Source of the DNA: Isurus oxyrinchus
Taxonomy: Eukaryota
Direction: 5' to 3'
Assembly (NCBI GenBank): GCA_026770705.1
Contig: JANJGN010000052.1
Span: forward strand, 186,001-250,000
Length of the DNA: 64,000 nt
Shown here: positions 5,489 through 49,314 of the stretch, piece by piece
Numbering within the stretch: the first letter of the stretch is position 1
How the letters are laid out: each line of letters opens with the position of its first letter
Program-made: the position numbers and the translations under genes
Notes under the pieces: model-generated
The model's database searches: none
The model's input: the letters and a program-made list of their open reading frames with translations, nothing else
Told to the model about the DNA's origin: nothing

Positions 5489-5770
5489 ATGCACCACGGA
5501 ACCTATCAATTACTTCTCTTGATATGATTAACGCTTCATCGATCAATATAATTGAGGGGAATTCTGCAGTGATAATCTGCTCTGTCGAGAGCTTCCCAGC
5601 TTCTAACCTGACGTGGCGACATCTTAATGTCTCAATGAACAGAACAAGTTCCAACAATGAGCTGTGGTTGGTGATTCCTCACGTTACATCCAGGGACACT
5701 GGAGACTATCAGTGTGTGGCAGAGAATGAACATGGAGCAGTGGAGGGGTTCATAACCATCACTGTGGAAC
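5489..5770 (+). CDS. Siglec-like gene A, C2-set Ig exon (repeat 1)
   Basis: tttag|AT..GAAC|gtgagt, 282 bp, phase 1-1; APRNLSI..EGNSAVIICSVESFPASNLTW..DTGDYQCVAENEHG. Confidence 0.92.
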
Positions 5771-5796
5771 GTGAGTTACTGCAAACTTCAACATCA

Positions 5797-5834
<38 letters not shown>

Positions 5835-6113
5835 TACACACACACACACACATGTGTAAGCATACACATGCATAAGTATACACAGACAGTCATACACGTA
5901 CAAACACATACACAGGAAAATACACACCCATCTCAAACACACACACATATTCATGCCCACACAAAGACACACACATACACGTACTCTCACTCATGGACAG
6001 ACATAGACACACAGACATGCGTGCATGCGCACACACAGATACATGTGTGCATACACACACAAGCACACTCACTTGTGCAGAAACACAAACACAAACAAAC
6101 ACATACACACATG
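5797..6113. repeat. (CA)n-rich microsatellite
   Basis: Degenerate CA repeats just after the C2 donor site. Confidence 0.9.
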
Positions 6114-6545
6114 TGAGTTCCGTGTCCTCTCTCAGTGCTGCACTGGAGTCTCGGTGTCATCTCCAATTCTGTGTTGAAAGAAGGTAAACTCCAAATCAAT
6201 AAGACCCTGAATTGGATGAGCAACCTCCTGAACAGAGAAATGTAGATTTAGACCTCAGTACTCCATCGATCAAATACAATTCATTGCCTCTCAAAACCTT
6301 TGCGAAATCCTGAGGATGTGAAAGCAAGCTTCTTTCATTCTAGATGGACAACACCTCTACTGGTGGGAGAATGCAACTGCAGTGTGACAGTTTACATAGG
6401 CAGTGTCAATTATAAATGTGCCATAAGACCTTATCCTGAGGGAAGTTACCTGGAAATGCATTCAGTCATCAGATACAGAGAGATGATGCATGGAGTCTTG
6501 CTGTGCACTATATTTGCTCACATTAAAATCTTTCTATGTTTTTAG

Positions 6546-6827
6546 ATGCACCACGGAATCTCTCAATTACTTCTCTTGGTATGATTAACGCTTCATCGAT
6601 CAATATAATTGAGGGGAATTCTGCAGTGATAATCTGCTCTGTCGAGAGCTTCCCAGCTTCTAACCTGACGTGGCGACATCTTAATGTCCCAATGAACAGA
6701 ACAAGTTCCAACAATGAGCTGTGGTTGGTGATTCCTCACGTTACATCCAGGGCCACTGGAGACTATCAGTGTGTGGCAGAGAATGAACATGGAGCAGTGG
6801 AGGGATTCATAACCATCACTGTGGAAT
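6546..6827 (+). CDS. Siglec-like gene A, C2-set Ig exon (repeat 2)
   Basis: 282 bp, AG/GT, phase 1-1, near-identical to repeat 1. Confidence 0.92.
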
Positions 6828-6849
6828 GTGAGTTAATGCAAACTTCAAC

Positions 6850-6863
6850 ATCACTCTCACACA

Positions 6864-6931
<68 letters not shown>

Positions 6932-7648: not shown

Positions 7649-7930
7649 ACACACCACGGAATCTCTTAATTACTTCTCTGGATATGATTAACGCTTCATC
7701 GATCAATATAATTGAGGGGAATTCTGCAGTGATAATCTGCTCTGTCGAGAGCTTCCCAGCTTCTAACCTGACGTGGCGACATCTTAATGTCCCAATGAAC
7801 AGAACAAGTTCCAACAATGAGCTGTGGTTGGTGATTCCTCACGTTACATCCAGGGACACTGGAGACTATCAGTGTGTGGCAGAGAATGAACATGGAGCAG
7901 TGGAGGGGTTCATAACCATCACTGTGGAAC
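7649..7930 (+). CDS. Siglec-like gene A, C2-set Ig exon (repeat 3)
   Basis: 282 bp, AG/GT, phase 1-1, near-identical. Confidence 0.92.
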
Positions 7931-8420
7931 GTGAGTGTACACAGAATTCAACATCTCTCTCAGATTTGAACACATATACACAAATGCACACCCACACGCA
8001 CACACAAGCACTCACTGCACTGGAGTCTCGGTATCAGCTCCAATTCTGGATGGAACGAAGGTAAACCACAGATCAACAAGTCCCTGAATTGGATGAGCAA
8101 CCTCCTGAACAGAGAATTGAATATTTACCCCTCAGTGCTCCATCGATCAAATACAATCATTGCCTGTCAAGCCCTTGGGGACATCCTGAGGATGTGAAAG
8201 CAAATTCCTTTCATTCTAGGTGGACAGCACCTCTACTGGTGGGAGAATGTAACTGCAGTTTGACTGTTTACATAGGCAGTGCCCATTATAAATTTGACAG
8301 TGGAAGTTATATGGAGTGGAGGGACCTGGCTATGCATACAGACATCAGATACAGAGAGATGATGCAGGAGTCTAGCTGTAAACTGTGCTTGCTCACATTA
8401 AACACTTGATTTGTTCTTAG

Positions 8421-8702
8421 ATGCTCCACAGAATCTCTCATTTACTTCTCTTGATATGATTAACGCTTCATCGATCAATATAATTGAGGGGAATTCTGCA
8501 GTGATAATCTGCTCTGTCGAGAGCTTCCCAGCTTCTAATCTGACGTGGCGACATCTTAATGTCCCAATGAACAGAACAAGTTCCAACAATGAGCTGTGGT
8601 TGGTGATTCCTCACGTTACATCCAGGGACACTGGAGACTATCAGTGTGTGGCAGAGAATGAACATGGAGCAGTGGAGGGGTTCATAACCATCACTGTGGA
8701 AC
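8421..8702 (+). CDS. Siglec-like gene A, C2-set Ig exon (repeat 4)
   Basis: 282 bp, AG/GT, phase 1-1, near-identical. Confidence 0.92.
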
Positions 8703-9519
8703 GTGAGTGTGGAGATACATTTGTTTGTTTGTTGTCTCCGTGGTCTCCGTGGAGCCATTGGGATCGTGTTGTTTTTAATCCAGTTTTCTTCAATCCTCGC
8801 TCAGTCCACGTTATCCACACATCCAATTTTTCCTCTCCCTTTCTGTTTTTGCTCTCAGTTTCTCCTTCAATGGTTGTGAGGACAAGGCTGTCAGGTCTTC
8901 GTTTCCAATCTCCGTACTTGACGACCTTTCTCTCTCTAACTGTCCTGAACAACCCTTTTAATTGCTGAACTTCTCATTCTTTAATTGATAAATATTATAT
9001 ATAAATGTTACATGGATTACTTTGAAATGCAATACCTGTATTCATAAATTGCTTAGAAATTACTAAACATTCAACAGCCAATGCAGCATTATCGAAGTGA
9101 GCTCACTGTTGTAATGTAGGAAACACAGGTACTGATTTGTGCACAGCAAGATCCCGCAAACCACCGTGTGATAATGACCTGATAGTTGATTATTTCAGTG
9201 AGGTTGGTTGTTACATGTGTAGAGACTACATACCCTTTAGGGAGGGAAGCATGTCTCGATGTGTATGTGACTCCAGTCTGTAACACCAACATGGTTAACT
9301 CTTACCTGCCCTCTGAACTGGTCTCCCAGTTTGGGACAAACCAGTGGTTCAGGAGGAAGACCCCCCACCACCATCTCAAGGGGAAACTAGGGATGGACAA
9401 TAAATGTCAGCATTGCCCGAGAATGAGTATTTAAACACTGAGTGAGTGTATCGCTTCTCGAGATACATCGGAGCATCATTGTAAACCTGTAGTGCAGTAA
9501 TTAATGGCTGTTTTTACAG

Positions 9520-9616
9520 GTAGACACTCCAGTAAATGGACAGTAGGATTGTTCACGGCTGGGATCATGTTGAGTGTTTTCCTGGCTGGAATCTTCATCT
9601 GCATCTGTGTGAGAAA
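9520..9616 (+). CDS. Gene A transmembrane exon (no charged TM residue)
   Basis: ttttacag|..|gtaagt, phase 1-2; RHSSKWTVGLFTAGIMLSVFLAGIFICICVRK. Confidence 0.88.
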
Positions 9617-10129
9617 GTAAGTCTGAAGATTTAACTTGATTTTAATATAAACATTTGCTTCAATGTTCTTTCCTTAAGTCGGTGATTGTTTCCCTTGGGA
9701 TCAGCACCAGGTCCCTCTCTGTAAGTGATCCCTGTGTCCACTCTGATCCGGAGAGAACCTTTCATTGTCCTGTATCCAGTAAACAATCACGAGACCCAGA
9801 GATTCCTCACTCTGCACGATTACTCCGGGATAAATATTTGCTTCAATGTTCTTTCCTGAAGTCGGTGATTGTTTCCCTTGTGTTAAGCGCCAGATGCCTC
9901 TCCGTAACTGGTCTCTTTATCCATTATGATCCAGAGAGTGTTTTTCATTGCCCGTTATCCAGATGAATAATAATCAGTTGCTGTGATCTGGAAGGTGCTG
10001 CCTGAAAGGGCGCTGGAAGCAGATTCAATAGGATCTTTCAAAAGGGGAATTGGATAAATACTTGAAGGGGGAACATTTGAAGGGCTATGGGGGGAAGAGC
10101 AGGGGTGGAGGGGGGTAAAAGATATGGCG

Positions 10130-10380
10130 TGTCATTATAATGATATTATACCTTAGGCTTATTTACTGTACAAGAAACAAAGCACCAATCGCTCACAGGG
10201 ATTGGGTGAGAATGTTAATGATTTGTTTATCAAGACTCGGCACGAGAACAGTTATACATATGGAGAAAGATTGAAGGCATCAGAGCTGTGAGTGTGTGTT
10301 CTGCTCAAAGCAAAAGTCAAACTAAGATTGGATCACATGTCACACTTCCATTATAGTGATGTCACGCTGATATCCCTTAT
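10130..10380. mobile_element. Short LTR-like remnant related to the Gypsy LTR at 39674-41144
   Basis: Shared blocks tgtgttctgctca..aaagt..aaact..ggat/cacatg.cacacttcc..agtgatgtca.gctg. Confidence 0.45.
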
Positions 10381-10491
10381 TGGAACTAGAGACAGTCCAG
10401 TCGTTGGTGTAAGGTTACAGTGGGCTCTGTGTCTGTGCTGCACTGACTCTCTGCTATATGATAACCACAGTGTGATATTGTGTTATTGCAG

Positions 10492-10573
10492 GAGAAAGAC
10501 AGCGATGGAGGAGAGAGTTTCAGGGACCAGTGACATTGCATTGACCCCCAGTTCACTCTCTGTGAAGCACCAG
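10492..10573 (+). CDS. Gene A first cytoplasmic exon
   Basis: ttgcag|..CAG|gtacag, phase 2-0, links TM and last exon in frame; RKTAMEERVSGTSDIALTPSSLSVKHQ. Confidence 0.78.
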
Positions 10574-10789
10574 GTACAGGAGCTGTTTACACTCACTCCA
10601 AAGCTTCTATCTCAGTGTGTAGACAACACGTATACCAGATTCTCAGCCGGGTTACACATAGATATCTCCCTGTGAAGCAATGGCTCAGTGGTCAGCACTG
10701 TCTCTCGCTCCCAGCCTCTGTCACCCTCCATCACTCGCTCTTTGACCAGAAACCTGAACACAATAATGACAAGGCACCTGATGTCAGTA

Positions 10790-11205
10790 GTGAGGGAGTG
10801 CTGCACTGCCAGAGGGTCAGTATTGAGGGAGTGCTGCACTGTCAGAGGGTCAGTACTGAGGGAGTGCTGCCCTGTCAGAGGGTCTGTACTGAGGGAGTGC
10901 TGCACTGTCAGAGGGTCAGTACTGAGGGAGTGCTGCACTGTCAGAGGGTCAGTACTGAGGGATTGCTGCACTGTCAGAGGGTCAGTACTGAGTGAGTGCT
11001 GCACTGTCAGAGGGTCAGTACTGAGGGAGTGCTGCACTGTCAGAGGGTCAGTATTGAGGGAGTGCTGCACTGTCAGAGGGTCATTACTGAGGGAGTGCTG
11101 GACTGTCAGAGGGACAGTACTGAGGGAGTGCTGCACTGTCAGAGGGTCAGTATTGAGGGAGTGCTGCACTGTCAGAGGGTCAGTACTGAGGGAGTGCTGC
11201 ACTGT
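10790..11205 (-). repeat. 33-bp minisatellite (ACAGTGCAGCACTCCCTCAGTACTGACCCTCTG)n, reverse orientation
   Basis: About 12 tandem units; source of spurious TVQHSLSTDPL / RECCTVRGSVL ORFs. Confidence 0.95.
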
Positions 11206-11395: not shown

Positions 11396-11644
11396 GATGA
11401 ACAGAACGTGCTGATTACTGAGCCCCGGAACACAACCAGAGACACAACTAGTGAGGGGGAGACCCCAGCTCCCCGGGGTCTCTCCGCAGGTCCAGTGGGA
11501 GGCGATGTTGGACATGGGAACCCCGACAATACCGACGAGCTTCTCTACGCCAACATCAACTTTTCAAAGCTGCCCAGCGGTGACAGGACTGTGCACAGGA
11601 GCGAGGAAACGGAATATGCACAGATCAGGTTCCAGAAAAACTGA
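11396..11644 (+). CDS. Gene A last exon with ITIM (LLYANI) and ITSM-like (TEYAQI) motifs
   Basis: Polypyrimidine tract + tgtag acceptor, phase 0; DEQNVLITE..DELLYANINF..ETEYAQIRFQKN*. Confidence 0.9.
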   Translation, partial: DEQNVLITEPRNTTRDTTSEGETPAPRGLSAGPVGGDVGHGNPDNTDELLYANINFSKLPSGDRTVHRSEETEYAQIRFQKN

Positions 11645-15538: not shown

Positions 15539-15780
15539 NNNNNNNNNNNNNNNNNNNNNNNNNNNNNNNNNNNNNNNNNNNNNNNNNNNNNNNNNNNNNN
15601 NNNNNNNNNNNNNNNNNNNNNNNNNNNNNNNNNNNNNNNNNNNNNNNNNNNNNNNNNNNNNNNNNNNNNNNNNNNNNNNNNNNNNNNNNNNNNNNNNNNN
15701 NNNNNNNNNNNNNNNNNNNNNNNNNNNNNNNNNNNNNNNNNNNNNNNNNNNNNNNNNNNNNNNNNNNNNNNNNNNNNNNN
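15539..15780. other. Assembly gap (N run)
   Basis: 242 N. Confidence 1.
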
Positions 15781-15904
15781 CAGACAGACACAATCACACT
15801 CACATTCACACACACACACACACATTCACTCACACACTCACTCACACACACAAACACACACACAAAGACAATATCCCAACGACAACAAACTGCGATTAAG
15901 AGCT

Positions 15905-18110
15905 TCCTACAACTTAACTAACAGACCAAAGACGTATTGAACTGTCTAAAAGTGATCTGTTTTTCAAAGAAATACAAGATTGTACACAGATCAAAAATGG
16001 CTGACACAAGTCACCTGATTGCTGATACTGTGAAGTTGATCACTTCTCTGGAAAGGTTAAATGAATTGCACTGCAGACCTGTTGCATGGAAGTTCACACC
16101 TGGGGTGTGTCAGGGTTCACTTCAAACAGGGACAATCTTAAAAGGAAGGCATTAAAATGTAAAGTGCTGGACTTTGATCAGCTGTAGTTCAATCAAAACA
16201 GTGGGAACTGCTCACCAAGCGGATAATCATCAGCCATTCAAAACCCCCTGTGGAGGATACAATACCCCCATCTCCTGTTGATTTATATCTTGAAATGCAT
16301 CAAAGGTTTCAGAGATGCAAAGATAAAAAAATGGGAATATTTGGTCTATAACAATGAATGTAAAACATGCTGATTGAATTGACTTCAGGGATATACAGAC
16401 AGGAGTTTAACAAATGGTTCTGCCAAGCAGATTTCAGAGAAAGGAGGGGAAAAAGAAATATGGCAGTCTTCCACAAACACTGCTGGAAAAGAGCAGAAAT
16501 GATTTCTCCCACTCTCTCTCTCTCTGTCTGAAGCTAACAGAGTGTCTTCAACAATGTGCAAGTCTGAGCCAGATAAAATACAGGAATCTACAGAAAACCA
16601 ACTAATTTAAAACAGCTTCAAACTTCACAGCCTATGCTGCAGTACATGCAAACGACTCTTTTAATTTTTTATTGGACTCTATAATTNNNNNNNNNNNNNN
16701 NNNNNNNNNNNNNNNNNNNNNNNNNNNNNNNNNNNNNNNNNNNNNNNNNNNNNNNNNNNNNNNNNNNNNNNNNNNNNNNNNNNNNNNNNNNNNNNNNNNN
16801 NNNNNNNNNNNNNNNNNNNNNNNNNNNNNNNNNNNNNNNNNNNNNNNNNNNNNNNNNNNNNNNNNNNNNNNNNNNNNNNNNNNNNNNNNNNNNNNNNNNN
16901 NNNNNNNNNNNNNNNNNNNNNNNNNNNNNNNNNNNNNNNNNNNNNNNNNNNNNNNNNNNNNNNNNNNNNNNNNNNNNNNNNNNGTCTGTGCGTTAGTGTG
17001 TGTGTTTTGTCCCATTTTAATTATTTTTCCTCCAGTTAGGTAACTAATAAACTTACTCTTTCTTTGACTCCACCAAACATGGTTTAATTGGTTCATTCTT
17101 AACAATCAAAGAGACTTGTTTTGGAAATTGTATTTGGGGGAAAATATATTTTAAACCCTTTTTTTCAACCAACCATAATTACCTCTTAAATATCTTAATC
17201 TCATTACTACTGAATTCAAAGCCCACATCTCAAAACATACAAGTTGGAAATTAGTTGTGACAGTTGTTTCAAGTTTCCCTCCAGGATTTGAACAGCTCAG
17301 CATTTACCATCTGTTATGTCATAACAGAGCTTCCTTTAACTGAAACAACGTGCCAAAAATGTATTGAACTGTTTAAAGGAGACCTGTTTTTCAAAAGTAC
17401 TAGATTAGGCACTGATCAAAAATGGCTGTCACGAGTCACCTGATTGCTGATACTGCAAACTTGAACACTTCTCTGGAAAGCTTCAAATGAATTGCACTAC
17501 AGACATGTTGCATGAAAGTTCTCACTGAGGTGTGTCAGGGTCCACTTGAAAGAGGGGCTCCATTAAAAATGCAAAGCGCTGGACTCTGATCACTGTAGGT
17601 CTATCAAGGTAATGGGAACTGCTCACCATGCAGATATTCATCAATCATTCAAAACCCCTTGTGGAGGATGAAATGCCTCCATCTCCTGTTGATTTATATC
17701 TTGAAATGCATCAAATGTTTCAGAGATGCAAAAGTCAAAAAAGGGATTACTTGGTCTGCGACAATGAATGCAAGACATGCTGATCGAATTCCCTTTGGGA
17801 ATATACAGACAGGAGTTTAACAACAGGTTCTGTCAAGCAGATATAAGAGAAAGTAGGAGGAAAAAGAAAGATGGCAGTCACCCAAAAACACTGCTGGAAA
17901 AGAACAGAAATTCTCTCTCTCTCTCTCTCTTTCTGAAGCTAACAGAGCATCTCCAACAAAGTGCAAATCTGAATCAGATCACTACAAGGATGCCACAGGA
18001 AACCAATTAACCTTGAACAGCTGCAAATGTCAAAAATCTACGCCTCAAAGACAAGCAATTGTATTAATCATATATTCCTTTAAATTTTTATTGGACTCTA
18101 ACTTTTTAAT
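15905..18110. repeat. Two diverged ~780-bp direct repeats (about 15905-16686 and 17330-18110), LTR-like
   Basis: Colinear similarity (gatcaaaaatggctg..cacctgattgctgatactg..gatttatatcttgaaatgcatcaaa..ttattggactcta). Confidence 0.7.
16687..16983. other. Assembly gap (N run)
   Basis: 297 N. Confidence 1.
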
Positions 18111-22084: not shown

Positions 22085-22124
22085 ATGATCGGGAAATCTT
22101 ACTTCCTCCTGTCACTTCTCCAAG
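22085..22124 (+). CDS. Gene B signal-peptide exon (MIGKSYFLLSLLQ)
   Basis: ATG..CAAG|gtaata, phase 1, in frame with V exon; acceptor at 22042/22043. Confidence 0.85.
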
Positions 22125-24269: not shown

Positions 24270-24638
24270 TTGGACTGTCACAAGAGTGGAAAGGTGACAC
24301 TCCACGAGAGGTGACAGCACAGGAAGATTCGTGTGTACAGATTCCATGTCATTACAGTTATCCATCACGTTTGGAAAGCCGACCACGAGTCGGAGTCTGG
24401 TTTAATAACGAGAAACAGATTCCCTGGGCTCCCATAGCCTTTCACTCCAAGGATCACAGTCACGAGTTACCACGGTTCCACCATCGGACCCGGCTGTCTG
24501 GAGACCTGAAAGATGGCGACTGTTCCCTGATTATAAACAACATCAGACGGGAAGATGCAGGACCTTATTTTTTCAGAATAGAATTTGACAATGGTCCGAG
24601 CCATAACTATTACCCTGTAACCCAGCTTCACGTTTCTG
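24270..24638 (+). CDS. Gene B Siglec-type V-set Ig exon
   Basis: 369 bp, phase 1-1; SCVQIPC, VW, RTRLSGDLKDGDCSLII, DAGPYFFRIE with the sialic-acid-binding Arg position intact. Confidence 0.93.
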
Positions 24639-25038: not shown

Positions 25039-25335
25039 ATTTCACAGATAAACCCATGATATTCCCTGCTGAAATTATTGCAGGAAAGCCTGTGGATGTA
25101 AGCTGCACCTTCAACACAACGTGCAATGGAACAGCAGCACCTGTCTTAACCTGGGACATTCCCACTGACGTACCTGGATCAGTCTCAAACACTGTAAATC
25201 AGCATGGTGTCACTCTGACCTATACTTCTGTTCTGACCCTGATCCCATCACTCAAACACCATGGACACACTCTCAGCTGCAGAGTGAGATATCCATCTGT
25301 TTCATCGGAGCGTACCCTCGTACTAACTGTACAAG
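25039..25335 (+). CDS. Gene B Siglec domain-2 C2-set exon
   Basis: 297 bp, phase 1-1; KPMIFPAEIIAGKPVDVSCTFNTTC..LTW..SVLTLIPSLKHHGHTLSCRV. Confidence 0.92.
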
Positions 25336-27985: not shown

Positions 27986-28252
27986 ATGCACCACAGAATC
28001 TCTCAATTACTTTTCATGATATGATTAACACTTCATGGATCAATATAATTGAGGGGAATTCTGCAGTGATAATCTGCTCTGTCGAGAGCTTCCCAGCTTC
28101 TAACCTGATGTGGCGACATCTTAATGTCCCAATGAACAGAACAAGTTCCAACAATGAGCTGTGGTTGGTGATTCCTCACGTTATATCCAGGGACACTGGA
28201 GATTATCAGTGTGTGGCAGAGAATGAACATGGAGCAGTGGACGGGTTCATAA
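27986..28252 (+). pseudogene. Gene B second C2 exon, 3' end and splice donor replaced by LINE sequence
   Basis: Matches gene A C2 exons up to ..GGGTTCATAA, then lacks CCATCACTGTGGAAC|gtgagt. Confidence 0.85.
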
Positions 28253-29310
28253 ACATTCTGTTTTTATTAGCTCATGGGATGTGGGTAGTGTTGACAAGAC
28301 CAGAAATGATTGCCCATCTGTAACTGCCCCTTGAGAAGGTGGTGGTGAGCTGCCTTCTTTAACCACTGCAGTCCATGTGGTGTACGCACACCCACAGTGC
28401 TGTTAGGGAGGGAGTTCCAGGATTTTGTCCCAGTGATGGTGAAGGAACGGCCGATATATTTCCAAGTCCCAGGGCAGACCACCACCTCAAGTTCGCTTCC
28501 AAATCACACACCACACTGACTTGGAACTGTCTTGGTGGAAGAGGTTAAGGGTTTGGAAGGTGCTGTCGAAGGAGCCTTTGTGAGTTGCTGCAGTGCATCT
28601 TGTAGATGGTGCACACTGCTGCCACTGTGTGCCAGTGGTGGAGGGTATGAACGTTTATGCTGGTGGATGGGCTGTCGATCAAACAAGCTGCTCCTGGATG
28701 GTGTCGAGCTTCTTGAGTGTTGTTGGAGCTGCACTTATCCAGCCAAGTGGAGATTATTCCATCACACTCCTGAAATGTGCCTTGTCCGATGGTGGACAGG
28801 CTTTGGGGAGTCAGGAGGTGAGTTACTCACCACAGAGTTCCCAGCCTCTTACCCGCATTTGTAGCCACATTATTTCCTGTTGCCGGGATGTTGCCAGGGC
28901 CAATAGTCTTTGCTGTATCCAGTATCATCAGCTGATTCCTGATGTCACGTGGAGTCAATCGAATTGTCTGAAAGCTGACATCTGTGATGCTGGGACCCTC
29001 TGGAGGAGGCCGAGATGGAGCATCCACTCAGCACTTCTGGCTGAACATGGTTGCCAATGCTTCAGCCTTGTCGTTTGCACTGATGTGCTGAGCTCCCCCA
29101 TCATTAAGGATGGGGATATTTGTGGAACATCCTCCTCCTGTTAGATCTTTAGTTGTCCATCACCATTCATGACTGGATGTGGCAGGACTGCAGAGCTTAG
29201 ATCTGACCCGTTGGTTGTGGGATCGCTTTGCTCTGTCTATAGCATGTTGTTTCCGCTGTTTGGTGTGTATGTAGTCCTGTGTGTCACCTCAGCAGCTTGG
29301 CACCTCTGTT
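28253..29310 (-). mobile_element. Rearranged CR1-clade LINE fragments (antisense)
   Basis: Reverse-complement similarity to 13300-13880; PSITDVSFQTIRLTPRDIRNQLMILDTAKTIGPGNIP on - strand. Confidence 0.8.
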
Positions 29311-29498: not shown

Positions 29499-29595
29499 GG
29501 CGAGATTCCAATGAATGGAAAGCAGGATTGCTTGGAGCTGGAATCTGTTTGAGTGTTGGACTGAGTGGATTCTTCATCTTCAAGTGTGTGAGAAA
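29499..29595 (+). CDS. Gene B transmembrane exon
   Basis: Paralog of 9520-9616 (97 bp, phase 1-2); RDSNEWKAGLLGAGICLSVGLSGFFIFKCVRK|gtaagt. Confidence 0.85.
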
Positions 29596-31493: not shown

Positions 31494-31610
31494 AAGAAAG
31501 ATGAGAAGGATCTGGAAATGAAATCTAACCGCGGAGTCAGTCCTGATACAGATGATGATCTTTACGCGAACTGTGATTTTGCCAAGGATTCTGTTTATGG
31601 GAATTTATAA
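31494..31610 (+). CDS. Terminal cytoplasmic exon with DLYANC and ITIM-like SVYGNL
   Basis: ctattacag acceptor, phase 0; KKDEKDLEMKSNRGVSPDTDDDLYANCDFAKDSVYGNL*; paralogous to the preceding exon. Confidence 0.72.
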   Translation, partial: KKDEKDLEMKSNRGVSPDTDDDLYANCDFAKDSVYGNL

Positions 31611-34268: not shown

Positions 34269-34308
34269 ATGATCAGGAAATCTTACTTCCTCCTGTCACT
34301 TCTCCAAG
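34269..34308 (+). CDS. Extra signal-peptide exon (MIRKSYFLLSLLQ), orphan or alternative leader of gene C
   Basis: Intact acceptor (exon starts 34236), ATG and donor; 33610-35400 duplicates the gene B 5' region but stops before a V exon. Confidence 0.65.
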
Positions 34309-36399: not shown

Positions 36400-36439
36400 A
36401 TGATCGGGAAATCTTACTTCCTCCTGTCACTTCTCCAAG
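36400..36439 (+). CDS. Gene C signal-peptide exon
   Basis: MIGKSYFLLSLLQ, phase 1 donor gtaata. Confidence 0.85.
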
Positions 36440-41144: not shown

Positions 41145-41145
41145 G

Positions 41146-41769: not shown

Positions 41770-42147
41770 TTGGACTGTCACAAGAGTGGAAAGGTGACAG
41801 TCCCCGAGAGATGACAGCGCAGGAAGGTTCATGTGTACAGATTCCATGTCATTACAGTTACTCATCACATTTGGTAAAGAAAACACATGTCGGAATCTGG
41901 TATATGAGGAGGTACATACAGAACAAATGGTCTAAATGGTCTATAGCCTTTCACTCCAAGGATCACAGTCACGAGTTACCACGGTTCCACCATCGGACCC
42001 GGCTGTCTGGAGACCTGAAAGATGGCGACTGTTCCCTGATTATAAACAACATCAGACGGGAAGATGAAGGACCTTATTTTTTCAGAATAGAATTTGACAA
42101 TGGTCCGAGCCATAACTATTACCCTGAAACCCAGCTTCAGGTTTCTG
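41770..42147 (+). CDS. Gene C first V-set exon
   Basis: 378 bp, phase 1-1, open; GSCVQIPC..GIWYMRRYIQNKWSKW..PYFFRIE. Confidence 0.9.
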
Positions 42148-42384: not shown

Positions 42385-44225
42385 CACTACACCTTTCACC
42401 CCTCACACTGTCCGTGTAAACCCCCGTCCCATCTCCAGCCTCTCTTTCCCCTCCAATGTCCTTGAACGTGTTTCCATCTCCCGAATCAGTCCCCATCTTT
42501 CCCGCAACTCCATGTTTGAATCCCTCCAATCAGGTTCCCACCCCAGCCACTATGCTGAAACAGCTCTTATCAAGGTCACAAATGGCATCCTGTGTGACTG
42601 TGACAAAGGTCAACTTTCCCTCCTCGTCCTTCTCGATCTGTCTGCAGCCTTTGACACGCTCGACGACACCATCCTCCTCCAACACCTCTCCACTGTCGTC
42701 CAGCTGGGTGGGACTGCTCTCCCCTGGCTCCATTCTTATCCATCTCATCGTAGCCAGAGAATCACTTGCAATGGCTTTGCAGCATCATCTGAACAGTGTT
42801 AGTTTTCACCTGTCCACTGAGGATCCCCAGCTCTACCTCACCACCACCTCTCTCGACTCCTCCACTGCTGCTAAATTATCAGGCTGCTTATCCGACATCC
42901 AGTACTGGATGGGCAGAAATTCCCTCCAATTAAATATTGGAAAGACTGAAGCCATTGTCTTCATTCCCCGCTCCAAACTCTGTTCCCTCGCTACCAACTC
43001 CATTCCTCTCCCTGGCTGCTCTCTGAGATTGAAGCCAATCTGTTCACAGCTTTGTTGTCCTATTTGATCCTGAGATGAGCTTCCGGCCTCATGTCTGCGC
43101 CCTCACTAACACCGTCTATTTCCACCTCCTTAACATCGCACGACATCACTCTGTCTCAGCTCATCTGCTGCTGAAACCCTCATCCACGCCTTCATTACCT
43201 CCAGACTCGACTGTTCCAACACACGCTCTACACTCCATAAACTTGAGGCCATTCAAAACTGCTGACCACGTCCTTACTCACACCAAGTCCCATTCCCTTA
43301 TCACCTGCTCTGCTCGATGACCGAGACTGGCTCCTGGTCAAGCAAAGTCTCAATGTCCAAATTTACATCTTTGTTTCCTCTCTATCCCTGTAATCTCCTC
43401 GTCCTCCTCCAGTACCTACAACCATCCCATTCTCTGTAACCTCTTGAAGTATCTACCGCTTCCCTATATCTGCAAATTGATCCTGCCCAACAAACCTACC
43501 AATCTCTGCAACCTCCTCCAGCCACTACAACCCTCCCTATTTCTGTAACTTCCTCCTGCCCCTAAAAGCTTCCCTATCTCTGTAGCCTGCTCCAGTCCCG
43601 ACAACTTTCCCTGCCCCTGTAACCTGCCCCAGTCACTACAACCCTCCCTACCTCTGCAAACTCCTCCAGACTCTACACTCTCCCAATCTCTCTTAACTTT
43701 TCCAGCCCCTACAACCCTCCCTATTTCTGTAACTTCCTCCTGCCCCTAAAAGCTTCCCTATCACTGTAGCCTGCTCCAGTCCCGACGACGTTCCCTACCT
43801 CTGTAACCTGCCCCAGTCACTACAACCTTCCTTCTCTCTGTAACCTCCTCCAGCCCCTCCAACCCTCTGAGGTCTCTGTGCTCATCCAATTCCAGCCTCT
43901 TGACCATCCGCCGATCCCATCACTACAACATCGGCGGCCGTGCCTTCAGCTGCCTGGGGCCCGAGCTCTGTAATACTCTCCCTCAACCCCTCTTCGTCCC
44001 TCTCTCTCACTCTCTCTATCTCTCTCTCTCTCTATCTCTATCTCTCTCTCTCTCCCTATCCATTTCATCCCTCTTTGAAGATTCTCCATAACACCGACCT
44101 CTTCTGGCCAGCTGTCGCTAATATCTCCACATGTGTCTGGGTGACATACTTTGTTTTATGAAGCTCCTGTGTAGCACCTTGGGGTGATTTGTCATGTTAA
44201 ATTTGTTGTGTAAATATAACTTGTT
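42385..44225 (+). mobile_element. L2-clade LINE fragment with internal low-complexity tandem stretch
   Basis: VLERV..LQSG..AETALIKVTNGIL.D.DKGQLSLLVLLDLSAAFDT; GGRAFS at the 3' end. Confidence 0.85.
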
Positions 44226-44764
44226 GCCCTTTGACCCTCGACCCCAGCTCGAGTCTTATTTTAGAGGGAATGTACAACCTCCTTAGATTTCTGACCAAAA
44301 TGTCATTTGATTATTTTTATTGAGCGAATGCCAAGCCCCGATACCGAGCGAGAGCCTCCTCATTTGCTGAGTTTAAGGTGATGAGTCAGCCCCTTAGTCC
44401 GTAGAGGGGATTCTCCTCGGTAATGTGCAGCCTTGTTTGTGTCTCTCCACAAGCGCATGAGGGGTTTGTACAGAGGCTGCAGCGCTGGAGGGGGTCTGCA
44501 CAGGGGTCCTGGCCTGTCCTGAGCCGGTTTTAGCAAGGACCACTCTGGCCTTGGCAGCTGAAAGCCAGCCATTGGACAGACGGGGCCTGTCACAAGGAGC
44601 CTGTTAGTCACTCCCCCCCGTGTCTCCTGTGCTCGGATCCAGACCATGTTGGCTGGTGGATCTGGCTCAGGAAGGGTCCTCCCCATGGGACCCCCAGATG
44701 GAAGGTGGGTCGAGCGGGTCATTCACTTGCATGTTTATTCTGCAGCTTTAATATTTTAAGAAGG

Positions 44765-45562
44765 TAAGAATGTAGGATCATAAGAAATAGGGACAGGAGC
44801 AGGCCATTCGGCCCCTCCAGCCTGCTCTCACTGATCTGGTTGTGGCCTTAACTCCATTTTCCTGCCTGTCCCCCAAATCCTTGACTCCCTTGTTGATCAA
44901 AAACCTGCCTCACTCAGCCTTGAGTCTATTCAATGGCACAGTCTCCACTGCTCTCTGGGGAAGAGAATTCCACAGGCTAGCGCCCCTCTGAGAGAGGAAA
45001 TTCCTCCTCATCTCAGACTTAAATGGGGGAGCCCTCATTCCGAAACTGTGCTCCCTGGTTCTAGATTCCCCCACGAGGGGGAAACATCCTCCCAGCATCC
45101 ACCCTGTCAAGCCCCCTCGGAATCGGATATGTTTCAATAAGGTCACCCCTCATTCTTCTAAACTCCAATGGATACAGGCCCAACCTGCTCAACATTTCCT
45201 CACAGGACAAACCCTTTAATCCCAGGAATCAGCCCAGTGAAGCTTCTCTGAACTGCCTGTACACAATGATCCTGTTACAATCTCACTACCGCCCTGTGCA
45301 GCTGTTGCAAGACTTACCTCCTCTTAAACTCCATCTCTTCACAATAAAGGCCAACATTCCACTTGCCTTCCTCATTCCGTGTTGTTCCTGAATGCTGACT
45401 TTCTGTGATTCATGTACAAGGACACCCAGATCCCTCTGTACTGCATTCTGCATCCTGTCTCCTTTTAAATAATATTCTGCTTTTCTATTCTTCCTGCCAA
45501 AATAATTTGTTGCCATTCTCCTCAGTATTGACCATCCCCCCAATTCAGCCACATCTGCAAAT
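44765..45562 (-). mobile_element. CR1 LINE fragment (antisense)
   Basis: VQRDLGVLVHESQKVS..FPLVGESRTREHS..SLWNSLPQRAVE. Confidence 0.88.
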
Positions 45563-45621
45563 ATCGGGTTCAGTGGATCCATAAAACATCCAGAGTTAAA
45601 TATTGATATTTCTCTCCCCAG

Positions 45622-45990
45622 TTGAACCCTCACAAGAGTGGAAAGGTGACACTCCACGAGAGGTGACAGCGCAGGAAGGTTCGCGTGTACAGATTCCATG
45701 TCATTACAGTTATCCATCGTGTCTGGAAAACCAACCGCGAGGTGGAGTCTGGTTTAATAATGAGAAACAGATTCCCTGGGCTCCCATTGCCTTTCACTCC
45801 CAGGATCACAGTCACGAGTTACCACGGTTCCACCAACGGACCCGGCTGTCTGGAGACCTGAAAGATGGCGACTGTTCCCTGATTATAAACAACATCACAC
45901 GGGAAGATGCAGGACCTTATTTTTTCAGAATAGAATTTGACAACAGTAATAGTTCCAGCTACTATCCTGCAACCCAGCTTCACATTTCTG
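45622..45990 (+). CDS. Gene C second V-set exon
   Basis: 369 bp, phase 1-1, open; GSRVQIPCHYSYPSC..PYFFRIEFDNSNSSSYYP. Confidence 0.9.
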
Positions 45991-46718
45991 GTAAGTGCTG
46001 TGTTATAATTACTCAACAATTCACATTCAACTCTCAATGGGAAATAACGCAAACTGTGACATTTACATATTAACACAAAACACAGCTTATTATAACAGAC
46101 CGTCTGATTCTCAATAACCTGGTGATAGCTTCCAGTTCAGTCCTAAAGCAACCTCTAATACTCACTTTAATATCAATGATTAAATGTATTGACTGTGTCC
46201 ATCAATGTTATCAGGTTATCCACTCGCGTCGTTCTCTCTAATCCTGTCTCGAAGTCTGACATATCGACAAAAGAAAGATTCACATTTCTATGGAGCCTTT
46301 CACCACCTCAATATGTACCAAGTCACTTCACAGCCAATGAGCTGATTCCTGAATTGTAGTTACTGTTGTAATGTGAGAAACACAGCAGCCAATTTGCGCA
46401 CAGCAATCTCCTTCCAATTGCAAAGTACTAAATGGCCCAGATCGCTGAGTGAATGATGAGGTAGTGCACTCCAAACTCTGGTCTGCTCCTCCACCCTCAC
46501 CCACTATTATCAGTTCAAGTGTCTCGGAGTGAACGTGTATTAAGCTGAGAGACAGAAACACCAAAGTCTCAAAGCAGGAAATTCTCTCCTGATCGTTGTA
46601 ACCTCTCAGTTCTGATATCATCCTTGTAAAAGTGCTTTCTCGTGTGGGACTGTGGTTTCTATTTGAACTGATGCTTCACGTTATATTTCTCTAAAAGGAT
46701 CCATTCTCTGTCTGTTAG

Positions 46719-47015
46719 ATTTCACAGATAAACCCACGATATTCCCTGCTGAAATTATTGCAGGAAAGCGTGTGGATGTAAGCTGCACCTTCAACACAAC
46801 GTGCAATAGAACAGCAGCACCTGTCTTAACCTGGGACACTCCCACTGACGTACCTGGATCAGTCTCAAACACTGTAACTCAGCATGGTGTCACTCTGACC
46901 TATACTTCTGTTCTGACCCTGATCCCATCACTCAAACACCACGGACACACTCTCAGCTGCAGAGTGAGATATCCATCTGTTTCATCGGAGCGGACCCTCG
47001 TACTAACTGTGCAAG
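46719..47015 (+). CDS. Gene C C2-set exon
   Basis: 297 bp, phase 1-1, paralog of 25039-25335. Confidence 0.9.
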
Positions 47016-47340
47016 GTAAGTACGGACACCCTTCATTCTACATCAGCACTCCCTCAGCGCTGACCCTCTGACAGTGCAGCCCGTTCTCAGTATCCACATT
47101 CTCATGCCTCTCAAAGTGCTTCACAGTCCATAGAAGTTAATTGATCTTTATTTGATTGTTGCTGAATGAAGAGACAAGCTGTTTAAACTTTAAATCTCAC
47201 ACACATGATTTTCCATGGCAACACATCCACCTATCAGAGACCACTTGCCAACCAATCAGCACTCTCTTCCCTTTAAATATAAATTGTTGTTCACTCTCTG
47301 TTGGTAAACATGCGATCTGTCTTGTTGAGTCCTGCCCTGA

Positions 47341-47491
47341 TATCTGAATATCACAATGAACAGAACAAGTTCCAACAATGAGCTGTGGTTGGTGATTCCT
47401 CACGTTACATCCAGGGACACTGGAGACTATCAGTGTTTGGCAGAGAATGAACATGGAGCAGTGGAGGGATTCATAACCATCACTGTGGAAT
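47341..47491 (+). pseudogene. Gene C second C2 exon remnant (5' half and acceptor lost)
   Basis: Only MNRTSSNNELW..ITITVE|gtgagt remains; 5' part replaced by unrelated sequence 47155-47340. Confidence 0.85.
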
Positions 47492-49174
47492 GTGAGTGTA
47501 CACAGATTTCATCATCTGTCTCAGATTGAAACATGACACAAACACACACAAATATACAGACCTAAATAGACACCTGCAGATACACAATCCCTCGTATATG
47601 AGCACACACAAAGACACAAACAAACACACTAGCACAATACTCCCCAGTGGGTTACCTGACCTCCCTCAGTGCTGCACTGGAGAGTTGACCTGGATTCTGA
47701 GATTTTTGTTCCCTTTCATGTTTATGGAAGAATATGGAAATTGCAAAGTCTATTACAGACACTCAGATGCATAGAGACACTCACAGATACTCTCTGTCTC
47801 TCCAACTCTCTATCCTCCTTTAAGAAGCTTCCTGAAACCTAACCCTTTGACCAGTCAATTGTCCCAACTCCTCCTTACGTGAATCCGTGTGAAATTTTGT
47901 TTGAGTATCTGAGAGTAAGAGAGAGGTGGAGAGGTTTAGGAAGGGAATCCCTGTTGGTGAAAAGCTTACATCATGTTCTCACTTTTCCACTGCCCGTATT
48001 TCACCTGATGTCCAATGTCCTTGTTTATAAAAGGGATTGCCTATGTAAACGTCACGCTGTAGTTACACTGTACCACCAGTGGTGCACAGTAGAACTTAAC
48101 CCTTGCATCTCTCAGCTTTTCAAGCAAATCCACTTCCCAATTTGCCTCACAAGCTGTGAGTTCATCGGAATTAAATTATTTCTAAAACGGTAGATTTGAT
48201 GCCATTTTATTGAAAACTTCCTCAGTGCCTCCCTGAAGGGTTTACACTCTCTGGGAAGCAGGAATAGGCTGGATGTTGGGGAGTTCATCTTTTCCCAGAG
48301 AGCAGTGATCCTCGGGAATGTGCTGTCTGTGGGTGTGGTGGTTGCTGTTGCTCTGTTGCCTTCAAGAGGGATCTGGAGTGGTTACTGACTGGGGGAGAGA
48401 TCATGGAAACGGAGAATGATACAGCACAGGAGGAGGCCATTCAGCCCATTGTGCCTGTGCCAGGTCTTTCAATGTTCTATCCCATCAGATCCACTAACCA
48501 CCACTCCACTTTGCCCCCATCTTCCTCCTTCAAGTGTTTATCCAATTCCCCTTTTGAAAGTTCCTATTGAATCTGCTTCCACCGCCCTTTCAGGCAGCAC
48601 CTTCCAGATCACAACAACTCGCTCTGTCAAAACAAATTCTCCTCATCTCCCCCTCCAGTTCGTCAATCCGTGTCCCTCTGGTTACTGACCCTCCTGCCCC
48701 GTAAATACATCGATACTGTTCACCTCAACCACTCCCAGTGGGAGCGAGTTCCACATTCTCCCCTCTCTCTGGGTAAAGATTGGAACTGTTTATTAAGCGG
48801 GGGGTGTAAGTCCATGGGGGATTCCATCTCGATCCTGCCCGATTCGCACACGCGTCCGAGATGGATTTCCATCCTTCACAAAACGTTTCCAGAATTTTCT
48901 ACAGCACAATCCTGTACACAGCGATGGAGAGAAACATTGGACAGGGAGTCCAACAGCACAATGATCCATTCTCACCAATGTTCCACGCTAAGGGGAAAGT
49001 TCCGATTGTCCACTCTTAGAGTGTTTACAGTGAAAACATTCATTCCACATTGAGTCCCAGTGGATGGGTCAATATTACAGCAAATGTTGCAGTGATATGA
49101 AGCTTGATTGTTCAGCCAGAGTGAGAGATTGAAAGCGGAGAGTCAGTGATGATTTCTTTCTGTGTGTTCTCTAG

Positions 49175-49314
49175 ACAGTGGAGGAGAGATTCTGCACGTG
49201 ATCCTGATCCTGGGAATACGAGCTGTGATATTCCTTGTGGCTGTGGCTATCACTATCGCTGGAGTCTGTGTCTGGGAGGAACAAACAGTGAAAGGAAGTC
49301 GACAGACTGTTTGA
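49175..49314 (+). CDS. Gene C terminal exon: TM with intramembrane Arg and short Tyr-free tail (activating type)
   Basis: ttctttctgtgtgttctctag acceptor, phase 1; SGGEILHVILILGI-R-AVIFLVAVAITIAGVCVWEEQTVKGSRQTV*. Confidence 0.8.

What the first reader, a model, noticed from the sequence alone, without database searches (positions are those of the whole stretch)
5489..49314. Paired inhibitory/activating Siglec-like receptor cluster in a probable cartilaginous fish
Seen: genes built from near-identical Ig exons end in different signalling modules. Gene A has an uncharged TM plus LLYANI/TEYAQI; gene C has a TM Arg and a short tail without Tyr. Known: ITIM receptors paired with charged-TM, DAP12/FcRgamma-coupled partners (e.g. 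Siglec-5/14, Siglec-11/16) are kept similar by gene conversion in mammals. Inference: an independently expanded paired sialic-acid receptor family; the small TM exons are invisible in the ORF track and easily missed by annotation.
Basis: partly seen in the sequence, partly recalled or inferred. Interest (0 to 1): 0.85.

Follow-up and report, generated by a model that had tools for sequence, protein, structure and literature searches.

The report
Shark paired Siglec-like receptor gene cluster
This stretch of a shark genome holds four neighbouring Siglec-type immune receptor genes that share almost the same outer domains but end in an inhibitory tail, an arginine-bearing "activating" membrane anchor, or a third tyrosine tail. 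The on/off pairing described for mammalian Siglecs is therefore also present in sharks, although gene-prediction pipelines have already modelled it there.

Summary
All exons lie on the + strand and have clean AG/GT borders in phase 1.

- **Gene A** (5' end outside the window): four C2 exons, an uncharged TM, then LLYANI and TEYAQI before the stop at 11644.
- **Gene C**: leader, two V-set exons, one C2 exon, and a last exon (49175-49314) encoding a TM with a central Arg and a 13-residue Tyr-free tail.
- **Gene D**: a 16.2-kb tandem copy of gene C.
- **Gene B**: carries a third tail type with two YxN motifs, and is damaged.

The predicted 47015->49175 splice (GT..AG) appears in contigs of all four RNA-like runs laid on it. 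All five V exons match Siglec V-sets (Siglec-5, E 1.5e-15) and keep the essential Arg. The two N gaps are intergenic.

RefSeq models in other sharks already show the same design. In great white shark, a 270-aa V-C2-TM(Arg) protein is about 91% identical across the ectodomain to an ITIM-tailed neighbour. The claim "missed by annotation" therefore fails.

I found no paper describing shark Siglecs. Teleost literature says fish lack CD33-related Siglecs.

This scan has already reported the same system on many other pieces of this genome. Sialic-acid binding, adaptor coupling and SHP recruitment remain inferred.

The parts
5489..5770 (+). Gene A, C2-set (I-set-like) exon, copy 1 of 4; 282 nt, phase 1-1
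   Evidence: AG/GT borders and translation; Pfam Ig_3/I-set for this exon type
6546..6827 (+). Gene A, C2b exon, copy 2
7649..7930 (+). Gene A, C2b exon, copy 3
8421..8702 (+). Gene A, C2b exon, copy 4
9520..9616 (+). Gene A transmembrane exon, uncharged span, ends in phase 2
   Evidence: 84% identical to the TM of the Carcharodon and Cetorhinus ITIM forms
10492..10573 (+). Gene A first cytoplasmic exon (RKTAMEERVSG...KHQ)
   Evidence: tblastn with P0012 and P0015; borders
11396..11644 (+). Gene A last exon: ITIM LLYANI (11540-11557), ITIM-like TEYAQI (11609-11626), stop at 11642-11644
   Evidence: 85% identical to the Cetorhinus P0002 tail
15539..15780 (.). Assembly gap, intergenic between genes A and B
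   Evidence: no exon hits from 11644 to 22063
16687..16983 (.). Assembly gap, intergenic between genes A and B
22085..22124 (+). Gene B leader exon (MIGKSYFLLSLLQ + 1 nt), GT donor
24270..24638 (+). Gene B V-set exon with YFFRIE Arg; 369 nt, phase 1-1
25039..25335 (+). Gene B first C2-set exon (C2a)
27986..28257 (+). Gene B C2b exon that has lost its last ~25 nt and its splice donor
29499..29595 (+). Gene B TM exon, third type (WKAGLLGAGICLSVGLSGFFIFKCVRK)
   Evidence: 28 of 29 residues identical to Carcharodon P0017
30304..30388 (+). Gene B cytoplasmic exon with an in-frame TGA at 30329-30331; the other four copies in the window read TCA
31494..31610 (+). Gene B last exon: ...DDLYANCDFAKDSVYGNL and stop (two YxN tyrosines; third signalling module)
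34269..34308 (+). Extra leader exon (MIRKSYFLLSLLQ) in a partial repeat unit; no V exon of its own
36400..36439 (+). Gene C leader exon
   Evidence: position matches gene D's leader within the 16.2-kb repeat unit
41770..42147 (+). Gene C first V-set exon (V1 type), Arg kept
45622..45990 (+). Gene C second V-set exon (V2 type, starts EPSQEW); Arg kept; first conserved Cys replaced by Arg
   Evidence: contigs at 97-99% identity lie on it
46719..47015 (+). Gene C C2a exon; donor at 47015|GT
   Evidence: loose end at 46718 shows the first acceptor in use
47339..47499 (+). Remnant of a C2b exon: 3' half only, in-frame stops upstream, no acceptor. It is skipped in the observed splice.
49175..49314 (+). 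Gene C last coding exon: TM with central Arg, 13-residue tail without Tyr, stop at 49312-49314
   Evidence: spliced to 47015 in four runs; 40 of 45 residues identical to Carcharodon P0171
52591..52630 (+). Gene D leader exon
58628..59002 (+). Gene D first V-set exon (V1 type; LFRTD, Arg kept)
62300..62668 (+). Gene D second V-set exon (V2 type)
63482..63778 (+). Gene D C2a exon; the rest of the gene lies beyond the window
   Evidence: repeat-unit offset

Best explanation
[quoted passage not shown] The genes are assembled from interchangeable phase-1 exons: a leader, one or two V-set exons with the Siglec arginine, C2-set exons, and one of three alternative end modules.

- **Gene A** ends in an uncharged TM plus an ITIM (LLYANI) and an ITIM-like motif (TEYAQI). 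By analogy with CD33-related Siglecs it should recruit SHP-type phosphatases and inhibit. This is inferred.
- **Gene C**, and its 16.2-kb tandem twin gene D, end in a single exon encoding a TM helix with a central Arg and a 13-residue tail. By analogy with Siglec-14 and Siglec-16 this form should need an Asp-bearing ITAM adaptor of the DAP12 or FcR-gamma type and should activate. This is inferred.
- **Gene B** has a third tail with two YxN tyrosines. In this assembly it is damaged.

Shown here: exon structure, reading frames, family membership by sequence, the C2a-to-TM(Arg) splice in RNA-like data, conservation of the TM(Arg) exon across sharks, and mosaic sequence exchange among the V exons. 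Inferred: the ligand (sialic acid), adaptor pairing, and signalling polarity.
For: - **Exon map.** AG/GT borders, all phase 1.
- **V-set identity.** Pfam V-set and Ig_CD22. PDB phmmer best hits are Siglec-5 (1.5e-15), Siglec-7, Siglec-8, MAG, Siglec-10 and CD33, with FFRIE aligned to FFRVE of Siglec-5.
- **Splice.** The joint 47013->49173, GT..AG with cut +2 (that is, 47015->49175), is seen in X1, X2, X3 and X5. Depth peaks on exons.
- **TM(Arg) exon in other sharks.** It is conserved in RefSeq proteins of Carcharodon (P0171, 40 of 45 residues), Scyliorhinus (P0006, P0071, P0173, P0175) and Chiloscyllium (P0022).
- **ITIM tail in other sharks.** Cetorhinus, Carcharodon, Stegostoma and Hemiscyllium proteins carry it. 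The same LxYAxI...TEYxxI spacing occurs in tetrapod CD33-type proteins among the hits.
- **Pairing in great white shark.** P0171 (TM-Arg) and P0151 (ITIM) are about 91% identical through V and C2a, then unrelated after LTVQ. Both come from one 1.8-Mb scaffold.
- **V-domain tree.** The window's V1 and V2 types group with Cetorhinus V1 and V2. TM-Arg and ITIM proteins interleave in the tree.
- **Gene conversion.** V41k is 99% identical to V24k in mid-exon but 59% in the C-C' loop region, while its duplicate partner V58k is 90% in the same mid-exon stretch. Runs test p<0.001.
Against: - No adaptor gene, ligand or signalling was tested.
- The runs are contigs labelled 'RNA?' by guess, and the joint has only 21-30 letters on its shorter side. 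A paralogue at 95% identity or more, such as gene D, could be the source rather than gene C itself.
- Gene C's V2 exon has lost the first conserved Cys.
- Gene A's V exon is outside the window, so A and C are not shown to share a binding domain.
- Whole-exon dN/dS of the V exons is 0.2-1.2, which gives no clear sign of positive selection.
Confidence: 0.8

Rival explanations
1. The Arg-TM, short-tail products are not activating receptors. They would be tail-less decoys or regulators, or would use the Arg for another membrane partner or for retention, with no ITAM adaptor involved.
For: - No adaptor was identified.
- The tail is conserved to its very end (KGSRQTV in window, P0006, P0071). That hints at a function of its own, for example a class-I PDZ-type C-terminus.
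- The hydrophobic span is unusually long, about 28 residues.
Against: - A single basic residue in the middle of a TM with a very short tail is the standard mark of adaptor-coupled receptors such as Siglec-14, -15, -16, KIR-S and PILR-beta (established knowledge; PMC13358205, read).
- The Arg and its neighbours (ILILGIRA) do not vary between shark orders.
Confidence: 0.12
2. Gene C in this window is a decaying copy. The spliced contigs would come from near-identical paralogues elsewhere (gene D or other clusters), so this locus itself adds no working activating receptor.
For: - V2 of gene C has Arg in place of the first conserved Cys.
- A dead C2b half-exon lies in its last intron.
- Contigs on the TM exon carry 3-4% differences (records 21 and 29).
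- The family has very many copies in this genome.
Against: - All five coding exons of gene C are open and have intact splice sites.
- The V2-C2a-TM(Arg) layout without C2b is also the layout of the RefSeq models in Carcharodon and Scyliorhinus.
- Some contigs match gene C's own V2 exon at 99% (record 9).
Confidence: 0.2
3. The family is Siglec-like in fold only. Its ligands would not be sialic acids, for example proteins or other glycans.
For: - Binding was not tested.
- Some mammalian Siglecs bind ligands independently of the Arg (PMC12953582 abstract, seen).
- The C-C' loop region differs strongly between V1 and V2 (49-64% nucleotide identity).
Against: - The essential Arg is kept in all five V exons of the window and in the shark relatives.
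- The closest solved structures are all sialic-acid-binding Siglecs.
Confidence: 0.15

Closest known systems
Human Siglec-5 / Siglec-14 and Siglec-11 / Siglec-16 paired receptors
   Same: - Linked genes with highly similar V and first C2 domains.
- One partner has ITIM plus an ITIM-like tail; the other has a basic TM residue and a short tail.
- Similarity is maintained by sequence exchange.
- Siglec-5 is the best solved-structure match to the V exon.
   Different: - Separate elasmobranch clade, not orthologues.
- Many more copies.
- Genes C and D carry two V-set exons.
- A third tail module (YxN type) is in the same cluster.
- Adaptor use is untested.
RefSeq predicted shark proteins: Carcharodon carcharias 'myeloid cell surface antigen CD33-like' (P0171, 270 aa; ITIM forms XP_041037177-79; YxN form XP_041037180), Scyliorhinus canicula 'Siglec-14 isoform X2' (P0173) and 'Siglec-13' (P0175), S. 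torazame XP_072326180.1, Chiloscyllium punctatum XP_072409577.1, Cetorhinus maximus 'Siglec-12 isoform X3' (P0002)
   Same: - Same exon types, same C2a|TM(Arg) junction (LTVQ-D-SGGE...), and the same three tail modules.
- 87-96% protein identity to the window's V2, C2a and TM exons for Carcharodon.
   Different: - These are automatic models from other species.
- They are named after whichever human Siglec scored best, and I found no publication on them.
Human Siglec-XII (SIGLEC12), which has two V-set domains
   Same: Tandem N-terminal V-set domains followed by C2 domains. NCBI names several of the shark proteins 'Siglec-12'.
   Different: - Here both V domains keep the essential Arg.
- The double-V ectodomain is joined either to an Arg-TM (this window) or to an ITIM tail (Cetorhinus P0002).
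- That Siglec-XII has two V-sets and lacks the Arg in humans is from my own knowledge.
Other Ig-type paired receptor families (PILR-alpha/beta, KIR, LILR; teleost NITR and LITR)
   Same: ITIM partner against a charged-TM partner, tandem clusters, rapid lineage-specific expansion.
   Different: The V domain here is of Siglec type. PILR scores only E 7e-4 to 3e-3.

Membership tests
Siglec (I-type lectin) family | N-terminal V-set Ig domain with sequence similarity to Siglec V-sets | tested here: met
   - Pfam V-set (4.8e-11 to 3.9e-14) and Ig_CD22 for all five V exons.
- The top 18 PDB matches are all Siglecs, from Siglec-5 at 1.5e-15 to Siglec-15 at 2.4e-8.
Siglec (I-type lectin) family | Conserved F-strand arginine that binds the sialic-acid carboxylate | tested here: met
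   - YFFRIE in four V exons and YLFRTD in V58k.
- It aligns with FFRVE of Siglec-5 and FFRME of Siglec-7.
Siglec (I-type lectin) family | Siglec cysteine pattern: CxxxxC on strand B, a Cys on strand E, no Cys on strand F, and a third Cys in the first C2 domain | tested here: met
   - SCVQIPC...GDCSL in V24k, V41k, V58k and V62k. C2a has three Cys.
- Exception: V45k reads SRVQIPC, so the first Cys is lost.
- The disulfide pairing itself is inferred from the pattern.
Siglec (I-type lectin) family | Binding of sialylated glycans | not testable with these tools
   Needs recombinant protein and a glycan array.
CD33-related Siglec subgroup | Cytoplasmic tail with a membrane-proximal ITIM and a C-terminal ITIM-like TEYxxI/V about 20 residues later | tested here: met
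   - Gene A has LLYANI, then 17 residues, then TEYAQI, then 6 residues and the stop.
- Tetrapod hits have the same spacing, for example LHYASL...TEYSEI in Tupaia CD33, P0095.
CD33-related Siglec subgroup | Phylogenetic grouping with, or synteny to, the mammalian CD33-related Siglec cluster | tested here: inconclusive
   - The V-domain FastTree puts the window inside a clade whose named members are all sharks or rays (support 93). Tetrapod and teleost sequences lie outside it.
- PDB scores for CD33-related Siglecs and for MAG are similar.
- Synteny was not tested.
Paired activating/inhibitory immune receptors | Closely linked genes, one with ITIM(s), one with a charged TM residue and a short tail | tested here: met
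   Gene A's tail is at 9520-11644 and gene C's Arg-TM exon at 49175-49314, on the same strand and 38 kb apart.
Paired activating/inhibitory immune receptors | Near-identical ligand-binding domains in the two partners | tested here: inconclusive
   - In the window the ITIM gene's V exon is missing (upstream of base 1).
- Gene C and D V2 plus C2a are 93-96% identical in DNA to gene B's.
- The feature is met in Carcharodon proteins: P0171 against P0151, about 91% over V and C2a.
Paired activating/inhibitory immune receptors | The activating form is expressed as predicted | tested here: met
   The 47015->49175 GT..AG joint is seen in 4 of 4 runs, from 2 samples and 2 studies. The source may be this gene or a paralogue at 95% identity or more.
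Paired activating/inhibitory immune receptors | Association of the charged-TM partner with an ITAM adaptor, and of the ITIM partner with SHP-1/2 | not testable with these tools
   No shark adaptor sequence was on hand, and literature searches gave nothing for cartilaginous fish.

The most novel reading that the evidence does not exclude
The shark family would be the true sister lineage of mammalian CD33-related Siglecs, sharing a homologous last exon with ITIM plus TEYxxI. That would date the CD33-type inhibitory Siglec to before the split of cartilaginous and bony vertebrates, with later loss or reduction in teleosts. Sharks would then have built the activating partners on their own, by splicing a mobile one-exon Arg-TM cassette (and a third YxN tail) onto the same ectodomain exons.
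Probability: 0.4. Interest if true: 0.65.

Novelty: new member of a known kind. Interest (0 to 1): 0.5.

Why it matters
- **Gap in the literature.** Paired activating and inhibitory Siglecs are described for mammals, chiefly primates. A teleost study states that fish genomes lack CD33-related Siglecs (PMC7226832). I found no paper on Siglecs of sharks or rays.
- **Age of the design.** A large, expressed, three-tail Siglec-type family in sharks would mean the "same sensor, opposite signal" design arose about 450 million years ago, or arose repeatedly.
- **What it makes testable.** It allows a direct test of whether sialic-acid "self" sensing with pathogen-driven decoy logic is ancestral to jawed vertebrates.
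- **Limits on the value of this report.**
  - RefSeq pipelines already model these proteins in at least nine elasmobranch species.
  - This scan has reported the same system many times in this genome.
  - This window therefore adds a well-resolved locus, not a new kind of thing. What it contributes is the 16.2-kb tandem pair of activating genes, the gene-conversion mosaic, and a damaged third-module gene.

Tried and rejected
- **Leader exon search.** I first looked for it within 250 bp upstream of the V exons. The conserved stretch there has no usable ATG-to-GT exon. The leaders lie 2-6 kb upstream and were found only with N-termini of public shark proteins.
- **Direct TM-to-last-exon splice in gene A.** Rejected. 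The phases do not fit (phase 2 into phase 0), and an 82-nt exon at 10492-10573 closes the frame.
- **One gene making both forms by alternative 3' exons.** Rejected for this window. There is no ITIM-type TM or tail exon between 47015 and 52591, and no second copy of the Arg-TM exon anywhere in the window.
- **Positive selection on V exons.** Whole-exon dN/dS is 0.17-1.23, which is not decisive.
- **Literature.** Searches for shark or cartilaginous-fish Siglecs and for DAP12/FcR-gamma in cartilaginous fish found nothing relevant. PMC3015071 is not held.
- **Steps not run.**
  - Spliced gene models were searched exon by exon, by reference only. The joined proteins were never built or searched.
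  - No structure or complex prediction was run. No adaptor sequence was available, and sequence matches to solved Siglecs were already clear.

Full report
**What is in the sequence**

All features lie on the + strand. A tblastn of the open Ig exons against the window, alignment of the V exons with their flanks and inspection of the borders give these exon sets:

| Exon type | Starts | Size |
|---|---|---|
| V-set | 24270, 41770, 45622, 58628, 62300 | 369-378 nt |
| First C2-set (C2a) | 25039, 46719, 63482 | 297 nt |
| Second C2-type (C2b) | 5489, 6546, 7649, 8421 | 282 nt |

- A C2b copy at 27986 has lost its last ~25 nt and its donor.
- A 3' half-copy of C2b lies at 47339-47499.
- Every intact exon starts after AG, ends before GT, and is in phase 1 at both ends. 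Any of them can therefore be spliced to any other.
- Leader exons (MIGKSYFLLSLLQ plus one base, GT donor) were found only after public shark proteins supplied the N-terminus. They lie at 22085, 34269, 36400 and 52591.

**Gene models**

- **Gene A.** Its 5' part is upstream of base 1.
  - It has four C2b exons, a TM exon at 9520-9616 with an uncharged span, an 82-nt exon at 10492-10573, and a last exon at 11396-11644.
  - The last exon carries LLYANI (11540-11557) and TEYAQI (11609-11626).
- **Gene B.**
  - Exons: leader 22085, V 24270, C2a 25039, damaged C2b 27986, a different TM exon at 29499-29595, a cytoplasmic exon at 30304-30388, and a last exon at 31494-31610.
  - The cytoplasmic exon has an in-frame TGA at 30329.
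  - The last exon ends ...DLYANCDFAKDSVYGNL.
  - This third tail matches Carcharodon XP_041037180.1 (P0017; TM 28 of 29 residues identical). It recurs in rays (P0037, P0065).
- **Gene C.** Leader 36400, V1 41770, V2 45622, C2a 46719, and the exon at 49175-49314.
- **Gene D.** Leader 52591, V1 58628, V2 62300, C2a 63482, then it runs off the window.
- **C and D are tandem copies.** They are two copies of a 16.2-kb unit (35402-51603 against 51604 onward), 85-93% identical in DNA.
  - A scan note places a 140-nt Arg-TM exon 1373 bases beyond the window's end. That is exactly 49175 plus the unit length.
  - I could not read that sequence.

**The two signalling ends**

- The exon at 49175 follows tctctAG. 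In phase 1 it gives D-SGGE, then a hydrophobic span with one Arg (ILILGIRAVIF...), then EEQTVKGSRQTV and TGA. It has no Tyr.
- Both C2a (ends CAA G|GT at 47015) and C2b leave one base, so the frame closes either way.

**Assembly gaps**

- Both N runs lie between gene A's stop and gene B's leader.
- The first is followed by a CA-rich microsatellite. The second has AT-rich DNA on its left and GT-rich, low-complexity DNA on its right.
- No exon-like hit occurs from 11644 to 22063.
- Nothing in the finding depends on continuity across the gaps, and I did not fill them.

**Is it expressed?**

One call each of the look-up of sequencing runs and read laying was available. I laid four runs on 45400-49900: three from one sample of organism A and one from organism B. 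All are Logan contigs, and "RNA" is the tool's guess.

- Depth peaks on the V2, C2a, C2b-remnant and TM exons and is low in the introns.
- All four runs contain a joint 47013->49173, skipping 2159, with ends GT..AG and cut +2. That is exactly 47015->49175.

Limits on this evidence:
- The shorter side of the joint is only 21-30 letters.
- Contigs on the TM exon differ from the window at 3-4% of positions.
- The source may therefore be this gene, gene D, or another paralogue at 95% identity or more.

Other loose ends come from paralogues such as genes B and A:
- C2a joined to a C2b exon.
- C2a joined to a membrane-proximal exon type that is absent from this window (YKPEISQ...).
- C2b joined to C2b.

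**Family**

- Pfam gives V-set and Ig_CD22 for all five V exons, C2-set_2 for C2a, and Ig_3/I-set for C2b.
- Against solved structures, the 18 best matches are all Siglecs: Siglec-5 at 1.5e-15, Siglec-7, Siglec-8, MAG, Siglec-10, CD33, sialoadhesin and Siglec-15. FFRIE lies on FFRVE/FFRME.
- The Siglec cysteine pattern is present. The exception is V2 of gene C, where the first Cys is Arg.
- The ITIM...TEYxxI spacing of gene A's tail is the same as in tetrapod CD33-type proteins among the hits.

**Relatives**

- A full HMMER scan of 1.84 billion representatives with the V exon gave 233 proteins at E<=1e-10.
- The names I looked up show that the clade around the window's V domains (57 tips, support 93, FastTree) holds only sharks and rays. 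NCBI calls them "Siglec-8, -10, -11, -12, -13, -14, -15", "CD33-like" or "MAG-like".
  - Sharks: Cetorhinus, Carcharodon, Scyliorhinus, Chiloscyllium, Stegostoma, Hemiscyllium, Rhincodon, Pristiophorus.
  - Rays: Hypanus, Hemitrygon, Pristis, Mobula, Rhinoraja, Narcine.
- Tetrapod and teleost sequences fall outside that clade.
- The window's V1 exons group with the first V of Cetorhinus P0002. Its V2 exons and gene B's V group with the second V of P0002 and with Carcharodon. The V1/V2 split is therefore older than these species, and the window's species is a close relative of the great white shark (87-96% protein identity).

**The pairing is already visible in public models**

- Carcharodon P0171 (270 aa) is V2-C2a-TM(Arg). 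It has the same LTVQ-D-SGGEILHV junction and matches the window's TM exon at 40 of 45 residues.
- Against the ITIM form P0151 from the same 1.8-Mb scaffold, it is about 91% identical through V and C2a and unrelated after LTVQ.
- S. canicula "Siglec-14 isoform X2" (P0173) and "Siglec-13" (P0175), S. torazame XP_072326180.1, P0071 and Chiloscyllium XP_072409577.1 carry the same Arg-TM exon, with ILILGIRA invariant.
- The small exon is therefore not missed by annotation.

**Sequence exchange among the V exons**

Identity of V41k along the exon:

| Region | V41k vs V24k | V41k vs V58k (its tandem partner) |
|---|---|---|
| C-C' loop region | 59% | 64% |
| Mid-exon | 99% | 90% |
| Exon 3' end | 97% | 69% |
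| 3' flank | 92% | 100% |

- A permutation test on runs of identical polymorphic sites gives p<0.001 for V24k/V41k, V41k/V62k and V45k/V62k.
- This fits gene conversion or unequal recombination. Uneven constraint along the exon could inflate the runs.
- Whole-exon dN/dS is 0.17-1.23 and is not decisive.

**Literature**

- Searches for Siglecs in sharks, rays or chimaeras found only a passing mention in the whale shark genome paper (PMC8455134).
- A teleost study states that fish genomes lack CD33-related Siglecs (PMC7226832).
- A 2025 review treats paired Siglecs with mammalian examples only (PMC13358205).
- I found nothing on DAP12 or FcR-gamma in cartilaginous fish.

**Earlier findings of this scan**

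- The index holds 385 notes with "Siglec" for this genome. At least eight follow-up reports describe the same paired design on other DNA of the genome.
- One of them already notes three tail modules and the existing RefSeq predictions. I confirmed both here on my own data.

**Mechanism**

- *Shown:* exon modularity, three end modules, expression of the C2a-TM(Arg) form, and conservation.
- *Inferred from established knowledge of Siglec-5/14 and Siglec-11/16 and of other paired receptors:*
  - The ITIM form recruits SHP-1/2 and dampens signalling.
  - The Arg-TM form pairs with an Asp-bearing ITAM adaptor and activates.
  - Similar ectodomains let the activating form detect microbes that exploit the inhibitory one.
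  - The YxN tail would recruit Grb2-type SH2 proteins. This is speculative.

**Constraints kept**

- Spliced models were searched exon by exon, by reference only.
- The N runs were left as they are.
- No contig looked human.

Noticed in passing
window 21601, 30338, 33775, 35899, 52090 (the AERVG motif inside each ~86-nt exon-like element): The first cytoplasmic exon of the third (YxN) tail exists in five copies with AG/GT borders. Four of them sit about 490 bp upstream of the four leader exons (22085, 34269, 36400, 52591), inside the repeated promoter/leader block. Only the copy in gene B's tail (30304-30388) has a stop. The element may double as a 5' exon, or the tail may have been built from a neighbour's upstream region.
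   Followed up: partly
window 10783-11205, 18461-18852, 20927-21154, 25549-26409, 27302-27861, 35408-35579, 50663-51149, 51392-51768: A 33-nt minisatellite (unit GTCAGTACTGAGGGAGTGCTGCACTGTCAGAGG or its complement) occurs in both orientations in introns and spacers throughout the cluster (5-26 copies, 71-94% matches). It produces long false ORFs (STDPLTVQHSL...). It could promote unequal recombination between the genes.
   Followed up: partly
window 8703-8968, and the loose end at 47499: The fourth C2b exon of gene A runs on as an open frame for 88 codons into its intron (ORF 8411-8968). Contigs of runs X1 and X2 continue from a C2b exon into exactly this intron sequence (GGAGATACATTTGTTTG..., up to 255 letters). 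This is either retained intron / pre-mRNA or a soluble isoform.
   Followed up: no
window 45622-45990: Gene C's V2 exon reads GSRVQIPC where all other copies and the Carcharodon protein read GSCVQIPC. The Cys that in Siglecs links the V domain to the first C2 domain is therefore lost in this copy.
   Followed up: partly
window 49291-49311: The short tail of the Arg-TM exon ends KGSRQTV-COOH. The same ending is seen in Scyliorhinus proteins P0006 and P0071. The last three residues fit a class-I PDZ-binding C-terminus (S/T-x-V). This was not tested.
   Followed up: no
window 24013-24270 compared with 41528-41770 and 58371-58628: Gene B's single V exon has the upstream flank of a V1 exon (homology starts about 250 bp upstream) but the body and downstream intron of a V2 exon (93-96% to V45k and V62k). 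This looks like a V1/V2 recombination that deleted one V exon.
   Followed up: partly
window 1-841 / 3328-4168 and 3786-4946: An 841-bp direct repeat (98.9% identical) and a 393-bp tandem array (3 copies, 94%) lie upstream of gene A's exons. A scan note calls the array retrozyme-like. I did not examine it.
   Followed up: no
window 12849-13271, 26859-27200, 42368-43067, 49620-49991 (- strand): Reverse-transcriptase-like and other retroelement ORF fragments lie in the spacers and in gene C's V1-V2 intron. Similar fragments recur at 44846-45258 and 61497-62049.
   Followed up: no
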